From positions 21,824,001 through 21,888,000 of the forward strand of contig OZ281495.1 in assembly GCA_965637545.1 (NCBI GenBank): a stretch of 64,000 nucleotides of DNA, written 5' to 3'. Source of the DNA: Phallusia mammillata. Taxonomy: Eukaryota. How positions within the stretch are numbered: the first letter of the stretch is position 1; each line of letters starts with the position of its first letter. Under the pieces are notes generated by a model. It saw only the letters and a list, made by a program, of their open reading frames with translations, was not told the origin of the DNA and made no database searches. The position numbers and the translations under genes were made by a program. Shown here one piece after another: positions 2,981-15,300 of this stretch.

Positions 2981-4140
2981 TTAATCATACAATTTTACAA
3001 AAAATAAAAGCTAGCTAACATGTAAATGAAGTGTGTTACGATTTTACATCTATAAGTTCAGGTATAACATCAAAGAATTTACAGAGAGTGCACATAACGC
3101 AGGGTATAGTTTTCCATGTTTCGACCAACCGAAAAAATAGGCCCAAAAAGTGGACACACTCGAATTCAATTGCCACGTGTCGTTACCTAACATATTTTGC
3201 ACATTTGTACAGATACGTCATCATCACCTTGTTCACTGTACTCACATGCGATGTAACGATTACACGCTCACTGTATACCGCGTTTTATTCTGTTCTTCCT
3301 CAAATTAAAAAAACAACTAACTTTAAGGTTCTAACGCCATTCTAATAATCGGACAAGCTCAGACGAGCAGCAGCTTATACCGGCAAGAACTTACAGAGTT
3401 AAATATACTTTTTATATTCAGGCAAAAAGTTCGACGTCAACCTGACCAGCAACCCTACCTGATCAGCTATATATATATAGCCTATACAGTAGGACTTACT
3501 TATATAAATGTCATTAATAGTTCACACAGGTTGCAAACACTATTAGGGGGTGTTGCAATGCGACGATTCATATTTTGGTAAAAATGGTCCGGCGCTGACC
3601 CACATACAGACATAAAATTCCTGATCGGGATTCGTCTCCGGGTCCTGGGTTCGAACCTTGTGAAAAAAATCCGTATGCAGTCACCCATGCAGTCGACAAC
3701 GTTCTTCATACGTTTTAAGTTAACACCTGAAAAACTGTGGCATCAAGGTGTCGAAACAAACGCTTATGGCACGTTTAGTTTATTTGGTGTAAAAAACGCT
3801 TGTACTACGTCAGAGGTACCAGGGACTAAGCATCAGGACGTACTTTCTTTTTTGCACACCTGATTTCCATTATTATTCATGTGGATTTCTTTCATAAAAT
3901 GTTATGTCCCCGCCAAGCAGAAACCTATGGGTCCCCATGAATCTGTATTTGCTAAACGAAGCTCAGATACCTATCTGGCACGAGTGTAAATTGAGAGGTT
4001 TGAAAAAAACGACCGAAAGCTTGAGTTTGCCGATATTCGGCCAAATCAGCGACTATCTTCGAAAATTCGGTTTTGACCAAATAATTTGTTGCGATTCGAC
4101 TAAAACCGAATCTTTCAAGGTTTGCGCACATACTTTAAAG

Positions 4141-4333
4141 TAGGGCTTCTCAAAGTTTCTGAAATTTCTACGGGACCCCTCGATGGGTATAGCCTATACA
4201 CGTGAATGATGTTTAAACAATAAATTTACGCACGTATACCATTTATTGTGACAATGACATAAAAACGCATGATGTTTCGCGACCCCAAAGTTTTATTTCG
4301 ACCCGAAACCCCAACACAGTTGGAGAAGCTATG
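4141..4333. mobile_element. Degenerate hAT MITE (193 bp)
   Basis: TIRs TAGGGCTTCTCAAA and TTGGAGAAGCTATG match 10/14. Flanks CTTTAAAG (4133-4140) and CTTCAAAG (4334-4341) match 7/8. Subterminal GACCCC motifs. Confidence 0.55.
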
Positions 4334-4824
4334 CTTCAAAGCATAAGTGCCTTTTTCGCCGAATACATGCGATTCAATTATTCTATGGTAGTAGCACAAT
4401 TGTTTACTTTGGCAGCAAAACTCGAGGCCTCACAAACGATCCGTTGACTTGGCCTAATGACAAGTTTCAGCCCGCACCTAATTTAGTTGTTTTGGTGCAT
4501 CACTATAATTTAAATAAACCACACCTTTTTTCAACGAACGGAACTAATAAACTTGATTTGAACAAAACAAAGAAACAACACGTGTTTGTTAAAATAGGGA
4601 ACCTATTTCAATATTGCAACATTTAGGATTGCACCAAACGCCACTGGTTATTATGATGAAAATGATAATGACATCGAAAAATATGCGCATAATAGAAAAA
4701 CATTGAGATAAATGAAAATTATGACGCCAGATGCACGGTTCGCCGATTAAAAATGGCACTAAAAATTAGGTTAGAACCTTTAAATTAATTTAATCGCCAG
4801 AAGCCAACGTAATTGAGTTGTTGG

Positions 4825-6263
4825 TTAATCACAAACTTCTGAGGGAAGGGGAGTTCCTTCAACAGCAGCAACCGCATTTTCTACTGCCTTTCCTATCATT
4901 GCCAAACGAGCCATTTCCGTAGCACTTCCACAATGCGGTGAAATAATAACGTTGTTCATTGTTAAAAGCGGGTGGTTACGTGGCAACGGTTCAGGATCAG
5001 TCACATCCAAGGCAGCGGAATGTATTTCGCCGCAATTTAATGCTTTAACAAGAGCTTCTTGGTCGACAGTAACACCTAAATGGCACAGACATTAATTTGA
5101 TCTACACAGGTTAAAGTTAGTTAATTATCACCAAGTGTGTACACAGTAGTCGCTGATGCGCGAGTACTAGCAGCAAACTGGTACAAACTTGCACTTCCAA
5201 TCTGTTGCAACAATAGTAATGAAAGCTCACCCCTAGAGACGTTAAGCAACGTTGCAGACGTCTTCATCAATTCGAATTGCTTCCAGCCCATAATTTTCCT
5301 AGTTTCTGGTGTAACATTTACGGCAACCAATACATAATCACATAATGGTAACATTTCATTCAACGATGAGAAATATGTTGCGCCCACTTGTTCTTCATCC
5401 TTTACACTCCTATAAAATCTAAACGTTGGGCAAAGAGTTTAACAATCACAACGGTAAAACACAAACCTGCGACTGCGGTTGTTGTACAACACTTTCATGT
5501 TGAAGGCTTTTGCCCTAAAAGCAACTTTGTATCCAATACCTCCCATTCCAACAATACCTAAAGTGGTCCCAAATACACCTTTAGCCACATCATTTTTTGG
5601 AAAAAATGTGGTACTTGGTGACATTGCAAGTTTTACACCTGTTCATGAAAATGAAACAAAAAAGTGGAAACTAAATTGAAACCAATAACATACCAAACAT
5701 TAGTGTGGTAGTGACTTACCATTTATTAGGTTTCGGCCAGCTGCTAAAATTAACGCCACTGCCAGGTCTGCAACAGTTTCATCCAACACTTTAGGTGCGT
5801 TGGAAACTTTTACACCATAAGATCGGACCATTTGCACATCAATATGATTGTAACCTGCAGCAGCAACTGCTACTATTTTTAGTTTTGGAAGTCTATCTAT
5901 TAATTCTTTGGTAATCTGTTAAATTAAAGGCAATTGATTGTTACATTTTATCACCAGTTCTATTAATACTTAATATTAGGTCAAAAACAGTCAGTGATAT
6001 GTTGTAACTCTGTACAACTACATTAGTCTTTTAACAGAAACACATACACACAAAAATATTGCAAGTAACTTAAATTGTTTGGTCACCTTAGGCTGCTGGT
6101 GAATGGAAAAAATAGCCACAATTTTGTCGGAATAAACTTCGGAGTTTGAATTAAACTCTTCATTCCATACAATACTGAAATGTTTTTCAATTTCCTTAAC
6201 AAAGTTGGCTGGAACCTGATACAACTCATCTTGTGCAGAGCAAAGACAGTATGGCTTGGCCAT
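4825..6263 (-). CDS. D-isomer-specific 2-hydroxyacid dehydrogenase (glyoxylate/hydroxypyruvate reductase-like, 2-ketogluconate reductase-like), 324 aa, 5 exons
   Basis: Exons 6263-6087, 5915-5720, 5638-5467, 5409-5231 and 5075-4825 join in frame (975 nt). Rossmann motif LGIVGMGGIG; catalytic Arg (NVSRG), Glu (DPEPLP) and His (SPHCGS). Confidence 0.92.
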
Positions 6264-6835
6264 TTTGGAAATAAAACAAGATTTTATTAAACCAACCTAA
6301 AGAATAGTTTATATTGATAAAAATTAAGCACAATCCTTTTGGCATGTTGGTAAGGTAATGTCAATAATAATAAAACAATACTTAATCTTTTTAGTTTTTT
6401 TCCCATGCAACATAAATATATTTTTTAACTTTTACAGTACAAACTAAGCCATACACGTTCCATCTTTGGTAAAAAATAAGAATACCGCAATATTTCAAAA
6501 CTAACTATTCTGCATTCATAGATTTTGGCACCTGAGCACAATATTCTTTACTTCAACCCTGAGCACTTCACTCTGGATCATGGTAATTACACTGTTGTTA
6601 AAAATAAATAAAATGCAACAACAAATGAAAATTCAGGGAACATTTCCATAAGCACCACCACAAATTAAAATCTGAGAACATATAAATTAAGCAACTAGGG
6701 ATTTAAAAAATATTGCAAAACAAAACACATAAAGGTTACACAATGAAGACTGATCAGAACTTACACTTGCAGCAATCACAAATCATAAAAAGATAAAATA
6801 ATACAACCAGGCATGATCCAAATGCATGTTTTTTG

Positions 6836-8593
6836 TTAAACTGCTAAAGTTTTGGCAAATGCCTCAATCCAGATTGAAACTGCAACTGCACCAGCATCAG
6901 GCTTTGCCAACAGGTTGGAAGCAACATAGCTGGCCCTACCGGCTCTTGCTTTCATGTTGGCAGTGGATTCAGCAGCATCACAGCATGCTTTGCTGACAAC
7001 TTTTGCAACTTCCTTTGGACTGCTTTTTTTCTTGATTTGATTCTGTAAAGAAGAATGGGCAGCTGTCAGCGCATCAAGCATTGTGCGATCACCAGGCTCT
7101 GCTCCGCCATATTTGGAAACTGCATTTACCCCAGCTTGGAGACAGTCACAAATTGTAGCCATATTTAAATCCTTGGCTAATCCAGCTGCAGCAGTAAAAA
7201 ATAGGCTATATAAACCACCAGATGCACCTCCCATGGTCTCCTCAGCGCTGCTAGCTATATTTAACAAAATTTTGTCTATGGACAAAGCTTTCCAAGTTTC
7301 ACATTTATCTAGAATGTCTGTTGCCCCCCTTTTTATGGTAGAACCACAGTCACCATCACCAGCTAGTGTGTCCAACTCATTTAGTTGAACTTCATTTGCA
7401 ATCAGTGCCTGACAAGCATTGGTAATGGCTTTCAATACTGCATTTATAGTTGGATCACATGCTGCATCCACCTGCTCTTTCTGTTCTGAATCAAAATCTG
7501 CATCTTCTTTAGCTGCCAAATATAACGAAATGCTATTTATGTCATAGCCAGTGACCTGAGATTTACATAATGTAGGCCAATTCGGAGCATTCGTACTGGC
7601 ATCAAGGCATATTAAAATTTCCTCATCCAATTTCAAAATGTTTAAGTTGAAACCAGACATATCCAAAGATGTCATGAGATGGCCAAAATAAACTCTGACA
7701 ACAGTAAGTAATTTTTCCTTCAGGAAAAGAATAGCTTTTCTGGCCAAAACATGCATTTCCAAAACAGAAAGGCCTCCCAAGTTATTAAAAATCAAACTAA
7801 TTTGGTCACCTTCCTGCAACCTAATGTGACTAGCATTTTGAGGATTTGTCATGTGATTAATCATTGCAACAATAGTATCGTCAGCAGAAAGAATCTTTAG
7901 TCTTTTTATACCTGCCTCCCCATGTACCCCCAAACCAAGTTCCATTTCAGTAGGGTCCAAAACAAATGAGCTTCCACTGCCAGGAACAGAACACCCACCT
8001 AAACTGACACCAATTGTGCCCATTGCGGATGCTGCTCTTGTAGCCACTTGAACAACATAATCCAAAGACTTCCCCATTTCAGACAAGGCTCCAGCAATCT
8101 TCATAACTGCTACAATTCCTACAAGACCACGTTTACCAGCTGTTTTATCTTGACTTTCTAAAGCACAATCTTCACCAACCACCACCATCTTCACTTTTAA
8201 TTTTAAAGCCAGTGCCCTTTCAAGAGCAATACCAAAGTTCAAGCGATCTCCAGTGTAGTTGGCAACAATAAGAAGTACACCAGCGGGTGACGCAACAGCT
8301 TTGATAGCAGCTAGAATATCATTTGGGGGTGGGGATGCAAATATAGAACCAGCCACCGCAGCAGTAAGCATACCTTCACCCACAAATCCAGCAGCAAATG
8401 GCTCATGTCCAGATCCTCCTCCACAAACCAGAGAAACCAAGCCTTTTTTACGAAAATTTTCCACATCTTCACGAATCACCACCCTATGACCCTTTAACAG
8501 TCGTTGCCCAGGGTTTTGCATAGAAATGCTCTGAAGCATCTCATCCACACATTGCCCAGGATCATTCAATAACAAACGATCAACACGAGACAT
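6836..8593 (-). CDS. TKFC: Triokinase/FMN cyclase (dihydroxyacetone kinase, DAK1+DAK2), 585 aa, single coding exon
   Basis: Uninterrupted ORF from ATG 8593 (MSRVDRLLLND). DAK1 motifs GGGSGHEP, NYTGDRLNFG and GLGVHGEAG; DAK2 motifs LDTLAGDGDCG, GDRTMLDAL and GRASY. Confidence 0.95.
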   Translation of the reverse strand: MSRVDRLLLNDPGQCVDEMLQSISMQNPGQRLLKGHRVVIREDVENFRKKGLVSLVCGGGSGHEPFAAGFVGEGMLTAAVAGSIFASPPPNDILAAIKAVASPAGVLLIVANYTGDRLNFGIALERALALKLKVKMVVVGEDCALESQDKTAGKRGLVGIVAVMKIAGALSEMGKSLDYVVQVATRAASAMGTIGVSLGGCSVPGSGSSFVLDPTEMELGLGVHGEAGIKRLKILSADDTIVAMINHMTNPQNASHIRLQEGDQISLIFNNLGGLSVLEMHVLARKAILFLKEKLLTVVRVYFGHLMTSLDMSGFNLNILKLDEEILICLDASTNAPNWPTLCKSQVTGYDINSISLYLAAKEDADFDSEQKEQVDAACDPTINAVLKAITNACQALIANEVQLNELDTLAGDGDCGSTIKRGATDILDKCETWKALSIDKILLNIASSAEETMGGASGGLYSLFFTAAAGLAKDLNMATICDCLQAGVNAVSKYGGAEPGDRTMLDALTAAHSSLQNQIKKKSSPKEVAKVVSKACCDAAESTANMKARAGRASYVASNLLAKPDAGAVAVSIWIEAFAKTLAV

Positions 8594-9361
8594 TATTCTT
8601 AATGTAATAACACAAATCAATAACAAGCAATTGACACGTTACCAAAATGTCTGCAAAAAAGAAAAGTGATGTGGTTAATGGGTTATGAATCACATTATTA
8701 GTAGATAGCAAAACCCAGCAAAAAAACAATATGCTGATGCAAGATATTTTCTGGGACCTTTCCAACATTAGTTATGTAAAATTTTCCCCTCATTAGTATC
8801 AAAATAAGAGAACCAAAGTGGGACACTTGGCAATCAGCTGCAACATAATTATAAACTTCAAGGCAGCAAATAAAAAAATTCTCTATTACTGAAGTGCCCC
8901 TAAGCGCCAATTATAAATTCCATACATCTTTTAATTCGAATAGACACACACGCATGCTCTAAAAGAATTACACTCGCAGTGTAAGTGCATTCAAATTCAA
9001 ACAACAATGCAGCAAGCATACCACGTAGCTAGCGTGGTTGCTGCTGCAACTGCTCAACCGTGCAACATAACAACCGATCCAAGACGAAAAATATTGAAGA
9101 GACAGACGATGTCCGACAGAAGATTAGCGCATATTTGCCATGTGAACAAACATAAACGAACTGAGGCTTTACTTCTATATCATAACAATAATAATTTATA
9201 ACTTTGTAGTAACAAACTATTACTTTCGTACGTTTGTCGTACACATAAAATTATATCGTAACTTTAAGAATGGGCGTCAGGGTAACAACAGAAGCCATGG
9301 CATTGCTGCCTGAAGCGAAAACAGCCGATAAACTCATGTAAACGAGTTTGTGCAAAATAGT
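8594..9361. promoter_or_regulatory. Probable bidirectional promoter between TKFC (-) and the F-box gene (+)
   Basis: Head-to-head start codons about 770 bp apart. The interval from about 8935 to 9480 is CpG-rich, while both flanking gene bodies are CpG-poor. TSS positions cannot be determined from sequence. Confidence 0.6.
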
Positions 9362-12300
9362 ATGGAACCATTACGGGAATACGTTTTGACAAAAAGTAAA
9401 GCATATTATTCATCGCCTACAAGCAAAACCATAGCAAAAGATCGGAGCAGACGGAATGCTTTGACCCTCTTACCTCCAGATGACAGAAATAGTTTTGAGG
9501 AAAATGCTCAAAAGATTCAAGCTGTCTGCACATGGTTTCAAAGCTGGCAGGCATGGCAACAAAGAATTCTTTTTTCTGGTCTGATTCATCGCCTAACTAA
9601 ATCTCAATTGCGTAGTGTTAGCATGGCAGTTGAATCCATATTTCACAGGGACTTCATTGCAAGTTACAAGGAAGTTTACCCAATGAAAAAAGTTAAAGCA
9701 GGTCAAAGATTTACCTCAACCACTAACACTTTGCGCACAACCTTTGAAGCGTCAATTAGTCCTGACAAACTTTCCAAGTGTGTGGAAGGTGAGTCAAATG
9801 ATATGATTGATAAACAAACAGCTTCAAGTCCAATATCACTGTCAGTAAAACAAAATGTCAGTAGTGACAAACCTCCATTGCATCGGGCAGTATCAAAGAA
9901 AATTGACAGAACCATTAATGAAGACTTTGATCAAATTTCAACTAGCCTTAAAAACTTGTCCGCTGTTAATGAACAAAATCATGCTTCACCGAATGCAAAT
10001 GTTCATCTTTCTGTTGCCAAATCCAGTTTGGGTGCACATGCCGTTGTTAAAAATGAAAGCAAAATCTTATCCAATACTTCAGTGGCATCTATTCACTCTG
10101 TTGCACCAAGTTTATCTCCTATTGAAGAGGTCAACCCAGAGACAATATTCTTACCCGGAACTGAAGAGAAATCGACTGTAAAAACACCTGCTCATAATAA
10201 TACATTGTCAAGAGCAAAACAACATCAATCTGAAACATGTCAAAGGTGAAAACAACTCAATATATGTATATTTAAAAAAATCAAATATAAAACACAATTA
10301 AAATTCTTTATGAAAGCAAAACATCTGAACTGACCATTTTTGTTTTGTTTGCTAGCAACAAAAATCTAGAACAAATATCACGACCCGAATCTACTACATC
10401 TTTATGGACAATGGGCCCTGCTGATTCTGTTAATGAAGAATTTGATTATCAGAGTCATGTTACTCCCCTGGATGTCAATCTCGGTGACTTCTTTGGTCAT
10501 GATGGGAAACCGAAACACCTTGGTGGATTCATGACCAGCCAAAGCAAAGCAGGAAGTGAATTTCTGCACAGGTAGTACACAAAAATTGTGATTGGAATAA
10601 ACTATATAACAGGGGTGGCCAAACTGCGGCTCCCGAGCCGCATGCGGCTCATTGAGCCTTTGATTGTGGCTCTTTGATGCTGCACATGCATTCCCCATCT
10701 TGCAGTTGTTTGACCAGATGATAAAACAATGCATTCTATCACATATTAACAATAGACTGACTGTTTGTCATAACCAATGTACATTCCGAAAACCAACCGA
10801 AAAGCACAGAAGCGTGTTAGATTGTGCATTGTAGTCAAATATATTTTTAGATTTAAGCTGTAAGTCAAGGCAGACATTAAACACATTTTACATTTGTATT
10901 GCAACTTTCCCATCATATCATCCTAATTTCAAACACCTTGCAGCCCAGATGGAGACACACAGTATCACCATACAACAGTGGTTCTCAAAGTATGGGTCAC
11001 GACCCAAACATGGGTCGCGCAGGGTCAAAAAATGGGTCGCGCTATAGTGATTCAATTCTGAACAAACTATTACTGCATTAAGTAAACACAAACAAACTTA
11101 CTTAATGCAGTAGCAAAGTCAACTCACTCGACCACGTTGTACAGTAAAATGAACCAATCATTACCATATACAGACGACAATAGGCTTCCAACTTTACTGT
11201 CACGCACATGGCGATTGTAACGTAGTAACACGGGGAATAATAGGACAAGTATTCGTACAAGGAAACATGTTTAGATTTGGGATTCACTTCTATCAACGAT
11301 CATGCTGCAAAGCCACGATGTGTGTTGTGTTATGTAGTGTTGTCGAACGAATCGACCTCGTTAAGCCTGCAGCCATTTTGGCATGCTATGCTGCGACGAC
11401 GTGGCCTCGAAATTGCAGTCCGTTTCGTTGTCGAACAGGACAGTTAAAAGTCGAATCACAGACCTTTTACTTAATATAAATATTAAGTGGTCTCTTGAAT
11501 GAAAAATAGAGCCGTGCATTGAAGATTTATGAAGGAAAAATTTCAATTTAATGAAACACGCTACGATAAATCAATCATTGTTTCATAGTACTGTGTACTA
11601 CAACTGGCTGTCTGCGTCTTTTTTCATGCATATCAGAAGAAAATACATTATTTGATGTTTGAAGCTTGGGTCGTGAGATGTTCATATAACTCAGATTTGG
11701 GTCGCGGTCAAAAAAGTTTGAGAACCACTGCCATACAACAATAATCATTATTTGAGAGCATACACTTCGTTGTGAGTGAATAAATTCGTTTTTTGATTTT
11801 TTTGTGTTGCGGCTCTTTTAAAACTAAGTTATGTGACATGCAGCTCGAGCGTGAAGCAGGTCTGGCCATCCCTGCTATATAATGTGTACATTTTTTTATG
11901 CATAGATTAGATCATCAAAGAAACAAAATCCCGCTTCCCACATCTACTCAACTTTACAAACCCTCAAAACTATGGTCCTCTGAAAAAGCTCAAGTACCTG
12001 CTAAAACCAATCAGTTAAAAGAAGGCTTTCGGCAGCAATTGACCCAAATATGGAATGTACGAATGTTTACTACTGACATTTTAAGTATGACACTAATATG
12101 TTATTGTTATACAGTGGGCCACAAATTGGCAGGAACACATTTATGTTCGATTATTACTACAATTATTTAAATACAGTGATGGTTCATTTGAGAAATTTGT
12201 GGCAGACTGCATCAAGGAAAGGATAAATGAAGGTATGCGCTCACAATATTGAACTTAACTTCTGTAATTTAATATTTTATGTTTTACAGCAAATCTTGGA

Positions 12301-15300
12301 GAAATTAATGCCCAGCTTCTTCCTGACCAATTCTGGGTGAATGTTTTTGAATACCTTACACTCATTGACCTGTTGGCTGCTGGCCTTGTCTGTAAAAGAT
12401 GGTGTGCTTTGGTTAACAGTGATGCATTGTGGAAAAACAAATGTGAAGAAATTGGTAGGAAGCTGTTATTCCGGGATGTAATTTGCTTTATAATAACCAG
12501 GATGTCTATTATTTTCAGGGAAAATGTACAGCATTCCACATTTGACCAAACTAATTGAGCAAACAGCTGCACACAATGAAACCCTAGATTGGAGGCAGGC
12601 CTACATCGAACTTCATCAGAGGTTTCATTTCAATGCTGACAAAATTGCGGCAGCAGTTCCCAAAACAGGAGAATCAAAAGAAGGTATTCATTTCTGCACT
12701 GTTGCAGAAAATAATCCCAAATGTTTATCTAAATCATAAATTTGCATGACGCCACCCAAGTTTGCCTTCAAAGTCATAAATGTATGTAGTACCATTCACA
12801 TGATTTGAAATCTACTTTTGTCATCAAGCAGCTTTCCAAAACCCACCCACTAAATTATTGTAATAACTCTTTCACTATCCATTTACATAACATCTTGGAA
12901 AATTATCACTTTTATTTATTCAAGAAACAAAGTCATCTGTGGAAACTGACACTCCGTGGAGTTTGACAGAAAAATACAAAGGCTACACTTCATATTCAAA
13001 GTTGAAAAATACTGCTGCTGCCACAAAAAAGAAATGCAAGATACCAAATGTCATTATCTTAAATTTTAAACTTGTTTAAAGTTTTTGTTGTTTTATTTTA
13101 GTTCTACCATCAAAGCAAAAATTTGGAAGGTATCTAGGTAAGTTTTTTTTTTTGTAAATCTACTTGTACTTAATTTTTCTTTTATTTAAAAACATCCATT
13201 TTCCTGTATGGGGTAACAGAAGAAGTAGACCTTGAGGAGACAGCAGATACTGTGGAGGCAAATAAAAAATTAATACCAGTTTCTCCAGCTATTTTACCAC
13301 CTAAAGATAACCCTGCGGGTGGTGGATTTCTTGAAATGTGGAAAAATATAAAAGAAGGTCGAGGCTGGGGTGGTGTAGCTGCTTGACATAGCAATGTTAG
13401 AGTTCATAGTTGCTGTAGTGCCTTTAGCAAAGGTTGTTAGAACATGTGAGTGTGTGCCATTTGTTTTGCGTTTATTGGATATTTGAATATTTTTTCCTGT
13501 AATTTATTTGTAGATTGGGCACTGCATGTTGTGTTTTCTCAGTCTTGATTTGTTTTTTCCCCCAGTCTGTGGTTTTCCTGTGAAATGTGAATGTTTTTAA
13601 ATATCACTTTTTGTAAAACTTCCTATAGCCTGTACAGAAATACTTTAACCTTCACATAGACAACTTATAGCCAAATCGAGATAGTTTTTACGTGGTAAAC
13701 TCACCCAATCCTACATTATTTACTGCAACATTATTAACCAAAGTTACTGAGGTTTTGATATGCCACCAGAACTTCCAACAAACGACATAGAATCAGTATC
13801 AAGGCGCAGCGACCGTTGCTTTGACGTTGATGTGTATGATGAGCTTTTTTCCGAGGAGGAGGCAGAGAGTATGGCCAAAAGAAACGAGTTCTTTTGTGTC
13901 GACTACAGATTACCGCAGGATAATCGTGATAGGTAACAACATTAAGACGGTAAAACATATAGTTTTGCAATATACGTTCTCTTCGCTACACCATACAGAA
14001 TAAATGTTAACAAAACAACTTTTATTCGTTTGCTATGTTTACTTGAACTCGGTAAAGTATCGATTGTTTTGCAGGGTTTGGTTGGTCAATAGTGTCATAC
14101 ATCCAGTGCGAAGAGTGCAAATTCTTGAAGTAAGGAGTATAAAGAAGTCTATGTGTTCGACAACACAATTAAAAAAACATAATAAATTGATTAGGCCCAC
14201 CGTGGACCAGTTACTTGCGTGATGTGCAAAGGGAAACGGATTTTTTCGGGCGGACTTGACAGAAGAATACGAATTTGGTCCGACACCGGAGAGTGTTTTA
14301 TGAAGATGGAAGACTGCCTTAAAGGTATATAAGAGCCATCAATCTTATTTGGCGACACTTACAACTGTGTTTTCTTCCACCAAATAGGATAAATTCAATT
14401 TAGAATGTAAAATATAATTATAATTTAGCAATACATATATCACCACGTGTCACACCTGATAGAGTCAACTTTGTCTGTGTTATGTGTAACATAGTACGTA
14501 CGATTAAAAGTAAAGCTAAATTCAGTGCTAGTGTGTATTTGAGGATTAAACCATCATCACTGTATCCACTTATTTTTTGCTTGTTGTAGGTAGCGTTTTG
14601 GGTATTGGTGTGATGTCCAGTGCAAAGTGCCGAAAGCTGTATGCTGCATCGTGGGACACCAGCGTCTCAGTGTGGGACAGCGTTACTGGAAAGCAAATAC
14701 AGTGTTTGGATGACCACACGGATACAGTGTCAGCTGTAGCAGTGGATACTAAATACATGTACGAAACATTGTTTTTATCCAACATGTTTGGATTTGGAAT
14801 GCTAGATCAGAGGTCGCCAGGCATTTTCTCTCGTTTACTCCTTTGCAGATATATAACTTTTCTCGAAGTTTTAAAAACCGTTTTCCCAAACAATCGTGCT
14901 GATATTTACTCCCAGAACAATAAAAACCTACCGTATTTACCATAAATAGTTCACAAATCAATAAATTCTCTTCGTTTTCTTGGCATTGAATGGTAGGGGA
15001 TGAACGTGTTTTCGCATAACGCTAATGCGTTTTTTTGTAGTGTATCGTGTTCGCACGACGGCACAATAAGGGTTTGGGATGTTATCACGTACCAATGCGT
15101 AAGAGTTCTTGATCATCATCAAGGGGCGGTCCACTGTCTTTCCTACGAAGATGCATTAATCATCACTGGTGGAGCAGACAAGTATTTTTTACGTTTTTGT
15201 GCACGCAATTCACTATAACTGTCATTATCTGCTAACTAAAGCATACATGTGAATTATAATAGGGTTGTTTAAGCAGTTTTCCGGTACAGTATATTGTTCT

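What the first reader, a model, noticed from the sequence alone, without database searches (positions are those of the whole stretch)
4825..8593. Probable TKFC-dehydrogenase dicistronic unit linked by a 3'-UTR intron: a two-gene C3-metabolism operon
Seen on the minus strand: TKFC stop (6836), 71 nt, a perfect donor GTAAGT (6764), 468 nt, a strong acceptor TATTCTTTAG (6297) with a CTTAAT branch-like site, 33 nt, then the dehydrogenase ATG (6263). The spacer has no AATAAA/ATTAAA upstream of the acceptor. The only AATAAA (6288-6283) lies after the acceptor, 19 nt before the downstream ATG. The 572-bp spacer has only 2 CpGs, so it has no promoter-like island. Established: ascidians have operons resolved by SL trans-splicing; TKFC phosphorylates glyceraldehyde/DHA and GRHPR-type enzymes reduce hydroxypyruvate/glyoxylate. 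Inference: one acceptor may be shared between cis-splicing (TKFC mRNA, polyadenylated at about the next start codon) and trans-splicing (dehydrogenase mRNA), or an unresolved bicistronic mRNA exists. A junction 71 nt after a stop codon could also expose the TKFC mRNA to NMD.
Basis: partly seen in the sequence, partly recalled or inferred. Interest (0 to 1): 0.72.

Follow-up and report, generated by a model that had tools for sequence, protein, structure and literature searches.

The report
Ordinary ascidian two-gene operon, no UTR intron
A sea-squirt triokinase gene and the hydroxyacid dehydrogenase gene behind it form a typical ascidian operon, in which the second mRNA receives the spliced leader exactly where the first mRNA ends, and the proposed intron in the first gene's tail is not used.

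Summary
RNA contigs from four studies contradict the central idea.

**What the contigs show**
- The dehydrogenase mRNA begins at G6296. One contig carries the complete 16-nt Ciona-type spliced leader ATTCTATTTGAATAAG joined at AG 6298-6297.
- TKFC transcripts read straight through the GTAAGT at 6764. No 6765^6296 junction appears in any run.
- Overlapping contigs tile the whole spacer from the TKFC coding sequence down to 6298, the acceptor itself. The spacer is therefore an unspliced TKFC 3'UTR of about 537 nt abutting the trans-splice site.

**How this fits the known pattern**
- This is the published Ciona operon architecture: no intercistronic DNA, no canonical AATAAA before the boundary, and a single-exon first gene.
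- TKFC followed by a 2-hydroxyacid dehydrogenase and then Sel1 is also the gene order in Ciona and Clavelina, but not in Styela.
- One CpG-poor domain runs from the TKFC start into the dehydrogenase.

**Limits**
- No poly(A) tail and no unresolved dicistronic RNA was seen.
- An internal promoter is not excluded.

**Verdict:** a new member of a known kind, of low interest. An earlier follow-up of this scan reported spliced-leader use elsewhere in this genome.

The parts
8653..9349 (.). Divergent intergenic region between TKFC (minus strand) and the F-box/WD40 gene (plus strand). It is the candidate promoter region of the operon.
   Evidence: CpG o/e is 0.90 for 8651-9349, against 0.18-0.27 in TKFC and the spacer. 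RNA contig depth is zero at 8796-9100 in all four runs (table 2). The promoter role is inferred.
8651..8652 (-). AG of a splice acceptor (TTTTTTGCAG) in front of the TKFC 5'UTR. It is a possible trans-splice site for the first cistron.
   Evidence: The X1 contig covering TKFC ends exactly at 8652 (table 8); sequence. No SL letters were seen here, so this is only consistent with trans-splicing.
6836..8593 (-). TKFC (triokinase/FMN cyclase, DAK) coding sequence, a single exon of 585 aa plus the stop.
   Evidence: Dak1 and Dak2 domains. 63% identity to Ciona TKFC. Covered without any joint by the X1 contig 6607-8652.
6299..6835 (-). Unspliced TKFC 3'UTR, which is also the outron of the dehydrogenase.
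   Evidence: Contigs tile it: X1 6607-8652, X1 6402-6632 and X17 6298-6535 (table 8). No Rfam family, no repeat, and no ATG-initiated ORF longer than 39 aa.
6759..6764 (-). GTAAGT donor-like hexamer. Contigs read through it unspliced; rare use is not excluded.
   Evidence: The X1 contig reads 157 nt past it. An X6 contig of about 6741-6894, inferred from tables 2-3, also passes it. No joint is listed. The chance of the hexamer occurring is 0.22.
6483..6498 (-). 16-nt element TTGAAATATTGCGGTA, shared exactly with the Clavelina TKFC-dehydrogenase spacer. Function unknown.
   Evidence: None of 300 dinucleotide shuffles reaches 16 nt.
6308..6315 (-). AATATAAA, containing the variant poly(A)-signal hexamers AATATA and TATAAA, 9-17 nt upstream of the boundary.
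   Evidence: A signal role is inferred. Most Ciona operons lack AATAAA within 40 nt of the boundary (PMC1488885).
6297..6298 (-). AG of the SL trans-splice acceptor, which is the intercistron boundary.
   Evidence: The X5 contig carries 18 loose letters behind 6298. Their reverse complement, CGGG+ATTCTATTTGAATA, followed by AG gives the full Ciona SL (table 7). The X6 contig ends at 6297 and the X17 spacer contig ends at 6298.
6264..6296 (-). Dehydrogenase 5'UTR of 33 nt. It contains the AATAAA at 6288-6283.
   Evidence: It is present in the SL-bearing X5 contig and in the X6 contig. No spacer contig runs through it.
6087..6263 (-). Dehydrogenase exon 1 (coding part).
   Evidence: Joint 5915/6087 is seen in all four runs (table 5). 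The spliced ORF is 324 aa.
5720..5915 (-). Dehydrogenase exon 2.
   Evidence: Joints and a 2-Hacid_dh match at E 9e-17.
5467..5638 (-). Dehydrogenase exon 3.
   Evidence: Joints and a 2-Hacid_dh_C match.
5231..5409 (-). Dehydrogenase exon 4.
   Evidence: Joints and a 2-Hacid_dh_C match.
4825..5075 (-). Dehydrogenase exon 5, coding part with the stop.
   Evidence: Joint 5072/5228. The best solved relative is human GRHPR, E 2.6e-19.
4400..4824 (-). Dehydrogenase 3'UTR. It continues below 4400.
   Evidence: The X1 contig of 1700 nt has 309 nt beyond the laid stretch. The other runs end at 4520-4665 (table 8).

Best explanation
This is a Ciona-type, SL-resolved, two-gene operon without intercistronic DNA. 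I propose that transcription starts in the CpG-normal region upstream of TKFC (about 8650-9350) and runs through both genes.

On a given pre-mRNA one of two things happens. Either the RNA is cleaved and polyadenylated at or within 2 nt of the AG at 6298-6297, giving a TKFC mRNA with an unspliced 3'UTR of about 537 nt. Or the 16-nt spliced leader is trans-spliced onto G6296, giving the dehydrogenase mRNA and discarding the upstream part as outron.

The GTAAGT at 6764 is a chance hexamer that the splicing machinery does not use detectably.

- **Shown:** SL on the dehydrogenase mRNA at 6296, unspliced read-through of 6764, RNA tiling of the spacer down to 6298, the four dehydrogenase introns, and the synteny.
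- **Inferred:** a single promoter, poly(A) addition at the boundary, and mutual exclusivity of the two products.
For: 1. table 7: the X5 contig matches the window without mismatch and carries loose letters at 6298. Their reverse complement plus the AG gives CGGG-ATTCTATTTGAATAAG-GTTGG. That is identical to the major Ciona SL listed in PMC1488885 table 1.
2. table 8: the X6 dehydrogenase contig ends at 6297.
3. table 8: X1 6607-8652 joins the whole TKFC coding sequence to 229 nt of spacer with no joint. X1 6402-6632 and X17 6298-6535 tile the rest, and the last ends on the A of the acceptor AG.
4. tables 2 and 5: introns are skipped and 8796-9100 has zero depth, so the spacer signal is RNA and not contaminating DNA.
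5. PMC1488885: in all 19 Ciona operons where both ends could be mapped precisely, the upstream poly(A) site abuts the trans-splice acceptor, sometimes 2-6 nt upstream. In 16 of the 18 illustrated, there is no AATAAA within 40 nt. The same is true here.
6. PMC2760879: 60% of 5'-most operon genes are single-exon, as TKFC is here.
7; an intronless TKFC is followed on the same strand by a 2-Hacid_dh gene, 606 nt downstream in Ciona and 547 nt in Clavelina, and then by Sel1 on the opposite strand.
8. CpG o/e is 0.18-0.3 continuously from the TKFC start to dehydrogenase exon 3. It is 0.9 upstream and 1.19 downstream, so the spacer looks like gene body and not like a promoter.
Against: - No contig shows poly(A) letters at 6298. 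The 3' end rests on one low-depth contig (3.8x) from one run.
- The tiling of the spacer combines two runs from different studies.
- No contig bridges 6299/6296 in unspliced form, so a dicistronic precursor was not seen.
- Trans-spliced mRNAs lose their true 5' ends, so an extra promoter inside the spacer cannot be excluded.
- The stop-to-ATG spacer is long (572 nt) compared with what one pictures for operons, although this length is UTR and not intergenic DNA.
- Several other tunicate assemblies have an intronless TKFC with no dehydrogenase within 6-8 kb. The linkage is therefore not obligatory.
- All runs are contigs labelled RNA only by guess, although the splicing proves RNA.
Confidence: 0.7

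Rival explanations
1. These are two independent tandem genes. The dehydrogenase has its own promoter inside what is also the TKFC 3'UTR. Its short outron is removed by SL trans-splicing, and TKFC read-through merely overlaps it.
For: - No dicistronic contig was seen.
- About half of Ciona genes are trans-spliced whether or not they lie in operons (PMC1488885).
- A 16-nt element conserved with Clavelina lies 185 nt upstream of the acceptor and could be a regulatory site.
- The dehydrogenase contigs are several times deeper than the TKFC contigs in all four runs. The tool warns that contig depth cannot rank genes.
Against: - Spacer RNA is continuous with the TKFC coding sequence and stops exactly at the acceptor.
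- The spacer has gene-body-like CpG depletion (o/e 0.18), unlike the flanking intergenic regions at 0.9-1.2.
- The architecture matches the published operon hallmarks point by point.
Confidence: 0.2
2. The segment 6764-6297 is a cis-spliced 3'UTR intron whose acceptor is shared with SL trans-splicing. The product is a spliced TKFC mRNA that ends near the next ATG, or a spliced dicistronic mRNA that is possibly NMD-sensitive.
For: - GTAAGT and the acceptor exist at the stated places.
- In Ciona, first-intron acceptors can serve both cis- and trans-splicing, with donor strength setting the ratio (PMC11155486).
- Contigs drop rare variants, so a minor isoform is not excluded.
Against: - There is no 6765^6296 joint in four runs of four studies, while all four true introns are reported in each (table 5).
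- The X1 contig runs unbroken across 6765. A retained splice branch would have broken it there.
- Spacer contig depth (6.8) is close to the TKFC depth (10.1) in X1.
- The hexamer is at chance level (P 0.22) with a poor exon-side context.
- No donor is conserved in the Ciona or Clavelina spacers.
Confidence: 0.06
3. A stable unresolved bicistronic mRNA is the functional product. The dehydrogenase would be translated from it by reinitiation or internal entry.
For: Dicistronic cDNAs exist for some Ciona operons (PMC1488885).
Against: The dehydrogenase mRNA is seen as a separate SL-capped species in X5, and contigs end at the boundary in X6 and X17. No bridging contig exists in any run.
Confidence: 0.03

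Closest known systems
Ciona intestinalis/robusta SL-resolved operons lacking intercistronic DNA (Satou et al. 2006, PMC1488885; Satou et al. 2008, PMC2760879)
   Same: - The two genes are same-strand neighbours.
- The downstream mRNA carries the identical 16-nt SL.
- Upstream RNA ends at the acceptor AG.
- There is no AATAAA within 40 nt upstream of the boundary.
- The 5'-most gene is single-exon.
   Different: - The species is different.
- The poly(A) junction and the dicistronic precursor, both documented for the best Ciona cases, were not seen here.
- The upstream 3'UTR is fairly long at about 537 nt.
TKFC followed by 2-Hacid_dh in Ciona (L001) and Clavelina lepadiformis (L002)
   Same: TKFC is intronless, the spacing is 547-606 nt, an AG acceptor lies within 2-20 nt of the downstream ATG, and a Sel1 gene lies downstream on the opposite strand. 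Clavelina also shares the F-box/WD40 gene upstream.
   Different: - Ciona has two tandem dehydrogenase paralogues. The one next to TKFC is the more distant relative of the window gene.
- Ciona has an AATAAA 11 nt before the candidate acceptor, and another soon after the stop.
- I had no RNA data for these species.
Ciona genes whose first cis-acceptor doubles as a trans-splice acceptor (TS-1stAS genes, PMC11155486)
   Same: A donor-like site lies upstream of an acceptor that receives the SL.
   Different: In those genes both the cis and the trans products are observed. Here only the trans product and the unspliced RNA are seen, and the donor would sit in another gene's 3'UTR.
C. elegans SL1-type operons without intercistronic sequence
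   Same: The upstream 3' end and the downstream trans-splice site coincide, so the two mRNAs may be mutually exclusive products.
   Different: The characterised C. elegans cases keep a canonical AATAAA, as stated in PMC1488885. The phylum and the SL are different.

Membership tests
Ciona-type SL-resolved operon | Neighbouring genes lie on the same strand | tested here: met
   TKFC occupies 8593-6836 and the dehydrogenase 6263-4825, both on the minus strand.
Ciona-type SL-resolved operon | The downstream cistron's mRNA carries the spliced leader at its 5' end | tested here: met
   The X5 contig reads CGGG+ATTCTATTTGAATAAG joined to G6296 (table 7). This is identical to the SL in PMC1488885 table 1. 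It is one contig, and two others end at 6297 and 6298.
Ciona-type SL-resolved operon | The distance between the upstream transcript's end and the downstream trans-splice site is under 100 nt, typically 0 | tested here: met
   RNA contigs tile from the TKFC coding sequence to 6298, and the downstream exon starts at 6296 (table 8). The end rests on one low-depth contig.
Ciona-type SL-resolved operon | Poly(A) is added to the upstream mRNA at the G of the acceptor AG, or 2-6 nt upstream of it | tested here: inconclusive
   The X17 contig stops at 6298 but carries no A-run. Contigs cannot show ends reliably.
Ciona-type SL-resolved operon | An unresolved polycistronic transcript spans the boundary | tested here: inconclusive
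   No contig bridges 6299/6296 unspliced in four runs. Contigs drop rare species, so absence is not shown.
Ciona-type SL-resolved operon | A single promoter lies upstream of the first cistron | not testable with these tools
   The only evidence is indirect: a continuous CpG-poor domain across the spacer, with o/e 0.9 upstream of TKFC.
Cis-spliced 3'UTR intron | Transcripts join 6765 to 6296 | tested here: not met
   No such joint appears in four runs, while four real introns are reported in each. Contigs read through 6764 (tables 5 and 8).
TKFC / dihydroxyacetone kinase | The protein has Dak1 and Dak2 domains in one chain of about 580 aa | tested here: met
   Dak1 covers residues 24-337 (E 3.9e-106) and Dak2 covers 411-580 (E 1.7e-42). 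The named TKFC of Ciona, Clavelina and Styela is 60-63% identical.
GRHPR-type D-2-hydroxyacid dehydrogenase | The protein has a 2-Hacid_dh catalytic domain and a 2-Hacid_dh_C NAD(P)-binding domain | tested here: met
   Exons 2-5 match both families.
GRHPR-type D-2-hydroxyacid dehydrogenase | The gene is an orthologue of GRHPR rather than of another subfamily | tested here: inconclusive
   For the last exon the best solved relative is human GRHPR (E 2.6e-19). For exon 2 the best are archaeal glyoxylate reductases, with GRHPR weaker. The whole spliced protein could not be searched by reference.

The most novel reading that the evidence does not exclude
The GTAAGT at 6764 competes at a low level with the spliced leader for the acceptor at 6297. 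A minority of precursors would then be cis-spliced into a compact dicistronic or NMD-exposed TKFC isoform. Cis/trans competition at an operon boundary would in that case help set the TKFC:dehydrogenase ratio. Such competition is known only for first introns of single Ciona genes (PMC11155486), not between cistrons.
Probability: 0.07. Interest if true: 0.55.

Novelty: new member of a known kind. Interest (0 to 1): 0.24.

Why it matters
Roughly a fifth of Ciona genes lie in operons of exactly this form, so a further example in another ascidian is expected. The modest points of value are these.

1. The locus is a clean, RNA-supported example in which an apparent 572-nt 'intergenic spacer' is really the upstream gene's 3'UTR. 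Annotation pipelines and readers tend to misjudge this.
2. The TKFC-dehydrogenase pair is kept together in three genera spanning phlebobranch and aplousobranch ascidians. It is apart in the stolidobranch Styela, where TKFC has introns. This gives a dated case for asking how operons with single-exon first genes arise, for example by a retrocopy landing in the outron of a trans-spliced gene.
3. The two enzymes act on neighbouring three-carbon metabolites, so co-regulation is a testable but unproven idea.

Tried and rejected
- An exact-sequence look-up of the window's TKFC protein in the assembly collection found nothing. I therefore could not fetch this organism's own transcript contigs as readable loci.
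- The spliced dehydrogenase protein has no reference form and I did not type it. Whole-protein homology search, naming and orthology tests were therefore replaced by exon-wise Pfam and PDB searches.
- The transcript contigs L004 and L005 were uninformative. Of the two, only L004's 3' part is long enough to have held a dehydrogenase, and it does not. L004's TKFC groups with amphioxus and not with tunicates.
- Alignment of the three spacers shows no alignable conservation of the donor or the acceptor context. It yielded only the 16-nt element shared with Clavelina.
- Rfam at a relaxed threshold found nothing at 4000-9500. The spacer is not a repeat within the window and holds only a 39-aa ORF.
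- I considered AATAAA 6288-6283 as the TKFC poly(A) signal and rejected it. It lies inside the SL-bearing dehydrogenase 5'UTR, and no spacer contig reaches it.
- I did not use contig depth to rank the two genes, following the tool's warning.
Full report
**Observation**

- The TKFC ORF runs from 8593 to 6836.
- GTAAGT lies at 6764-6759.
- The acceptor AG lies at 6298-6297.
- AATAAA lies at 6288-6283.
- The downstream ATG is at 6263.

The spacer is 572 nt, 28.7% G+C, with 2 CpG where 11.3 are expected. It has no AATAAA or ATTAAA before the acceptor.

The upstream protein has Dak1 and Dak2 domains. The downstream gene has five exons: 6263-6087, 5915-5720, 5638-5467, 5409-5231 and 5075-4825. Together they give a 324-aa D-2-hydroxyacid dehydrogenase. 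Its last exon is closest to human GRHPR among solved structures. Exon 2 is closest to archaeal glyoxylate reductases.

The donor hexamer is not beyond chance. It occurs at least once in 22% of shuffles of the spacer, and at 0.26 per kb per strand window-wide.

**RNA evidence**

I laid contigs from four runs of four studies on 4400-9100. They are RNA: all four dehydrogenase introns appear as CT..AC joints in every run, and the region upstream of TKFC (8796-9100) has no depth. Three results decide the question.

1. *The spliced leader is on the dehydrogenase mRNA.* The X5 dehydrogenase contig matches the window without mismatch and carries 18 extra letters behind 6298. Their reverse complement is CGGG followed by ATTCTATTTGAATA. 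With the AG at 6298-6297 this gives ATTCTATTTGAATAAG joined to G6296. That is letter for letter the major spliced leader of Ciona (PMC1488885 table 1). The X6 contig ends at 6297.
2. *The proposed donor is read through.* The X1 contig 6607-8652 contains the complete TKFC ORF and continues 229 nt past the stop, straight through 6764. A short X6 contig of about 6741-6894, inferred from tables 2 and 3, also passes it. No joint from 6765 to 6296 is reported in any run.
3. *The spacer is fully transcribed.* It is tiled by X1 6402-6632 and X17 6298-6535. The latter stops on the A of the acceptor AG.

**Interpretation**

Satou et al. 2006 described Ciona operons as lacking intercistronic DNA.
- The G of the acceptor AG is the residue to which the upstream poly(A) is added.
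- Some ends lie 2-6 nt upstream of it.
- AATAAA is absent within 40 nt of the boundary in 16 of 18 cases.

Satou et al. 2008 added that 60% of 5'-most operon genes are single-exon. The locus here matches each point.
- TKFC is a single-exon first cistron.
- Upstream RNA ends at the acceptor.
- Only variant hexamers (AATATAAA, 6315-6308) lie nearby.
- The SL is on the downstream cistron.

The '572-nt spacer' is therefore the TKFC 3'UTR (6835-6299) plus the 33-nt dehydrogenase 5'UTR. The CpG pattern agrees with this reading: o/e is 0.18-0.3 continuously from the TKFC start to dehydrogenase exon 3, against 0.9 upstream of TKFC and 1.19 downstream of the dehydrogenase. The spacer resembles gene body and not a promoter. 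That last point is an inference from the known gene-body methylation of ascidians.

**Comparative evidence**

The closest TKFC proteins are those of Ciona (63%), Clavelina (62%) and Styela (60%).
- In Ciona and Clavelina an intronless TKFC is followed on the same strand by a 2-Hacid_dh gene, after 606 and 547 nt respectively. A Sel1 gene then lies on the other strand. tblastx shows the window is collinear with both.
- Ciona has two tandem dehydrogenases. The second is the closer relative of the window gene.
- In Styela, TKFC spans 12 kb with introns and has other neighbours.
- Other unnamed tunicate assemblies have an intronless TKFC without a dehydrogenase within 6-8 kb. One has it 5.4 kb away, behind a piggyBac-like insertion.
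- A TKFC tree separates the Styela clade from the rest.
- The spacers do not align, and no donor is conserved. The exception is a 16-nt exact match between the window and Clavelina.

**What is not shown**

- No poly(A) letters were seen at the boundary.
- No unresolved dicistronic contig was seen.
- There is no information on transcription start sites.
- The 3' end rests on one low-depth contig, and the tiling of the spacer combines two runs.
- An internal promoter remains possible (about 0.2).
- A rare cis-spliced isoform remains possible (about 0.06). Shared cis/trans acceptors are documented for first introns in Ciona (PMC11155486).

**Verdict**

The sequence observation is confirmed. The operon reading is supported in its classical form. 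The 3'UTR intron, the shared acceptor and the NMD reading are not supported. This is a new member of a known kind and of low interest.

An earlier follow-up of this scan (s1-408621) reported SL trans-splicing elsewhere in the same genome and named the species Phallusia mammillata. I confirmed SL use at this locus but did not verify the species.

Noticed in passing
window 6483-6498 (minus strand); L002 10211-10226: The exact 16-nt string TTGAAATATTGCGGTA is shared by the TKFC-dehydrogenase spacers of this species and Clavelina lepadiformis. None of 300 dinucleotide shuffles reaches that length. It is absent from the Ciona spacer and holds one of the spacer's two CpGs. Its function is unknown.
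   Followed up: partly
window 6836-8593; L001, L002, L003, L006-L013: TKFC is a single exon in this species, Ciona, Clavelina and several unnamed tunicate assemblies, but has introns over 12 kb in Styela clava. Together with the known excess of single-exon first cistrons in Ciona operons, this suggests the operon arose when a TKFC retrocopy landed in the outron of the dehydrogenase gene. This was not tested.
   Followed up: partly
L001 10362-12840 and 13368-15260: Ciona carries two tandem 2-hydroxyacid dehydrogenase genes behind TKFC. The distal one is the closer relative of the window gene, so the gene abutting TKFC in Ciona is a paralogue. The three genes might form a three-gene operon.
   Followed up: no
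L012 10478-12762 and 13214-13405: In one unnamed tunicate assembly a piggyBac-like transposase gene (DDE_Tnp_1_7, DUF4817) sits between TKFC and a dehydrogenase exon-2 homologue 5.4 kb downstream. This looks like an operon pulled apart by an insertion.
   Followed up: no
window 4091-4824 (approximate lower end): The dehydrogenase mRNA has a long 3'UTR. One contig runs about 309 nt beyond 4400, past the AATAAA at 4297 and 4247. Contigs of other runs end at 4520-4665, which hints at alternative 3' ends.
   Followed up: no
window 9497-13453 (plus strand): tblastx matches to one 939-aa Clavelina gene with F-box and WD40 domains run collinearly across this stretch. This bears on the separate finding that the F-box and WD40 halves may be split at 13220-13932.
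   Followed up: no
window 8651-8652: The only contig covering the TKFC 5' end stops exactly on the AG of a TTTTTTGCAG acceptor 57 nt before the ATG. The first cistron may therefore itself be trans-spliced, but no leader letters were seen.
   Followed up: no
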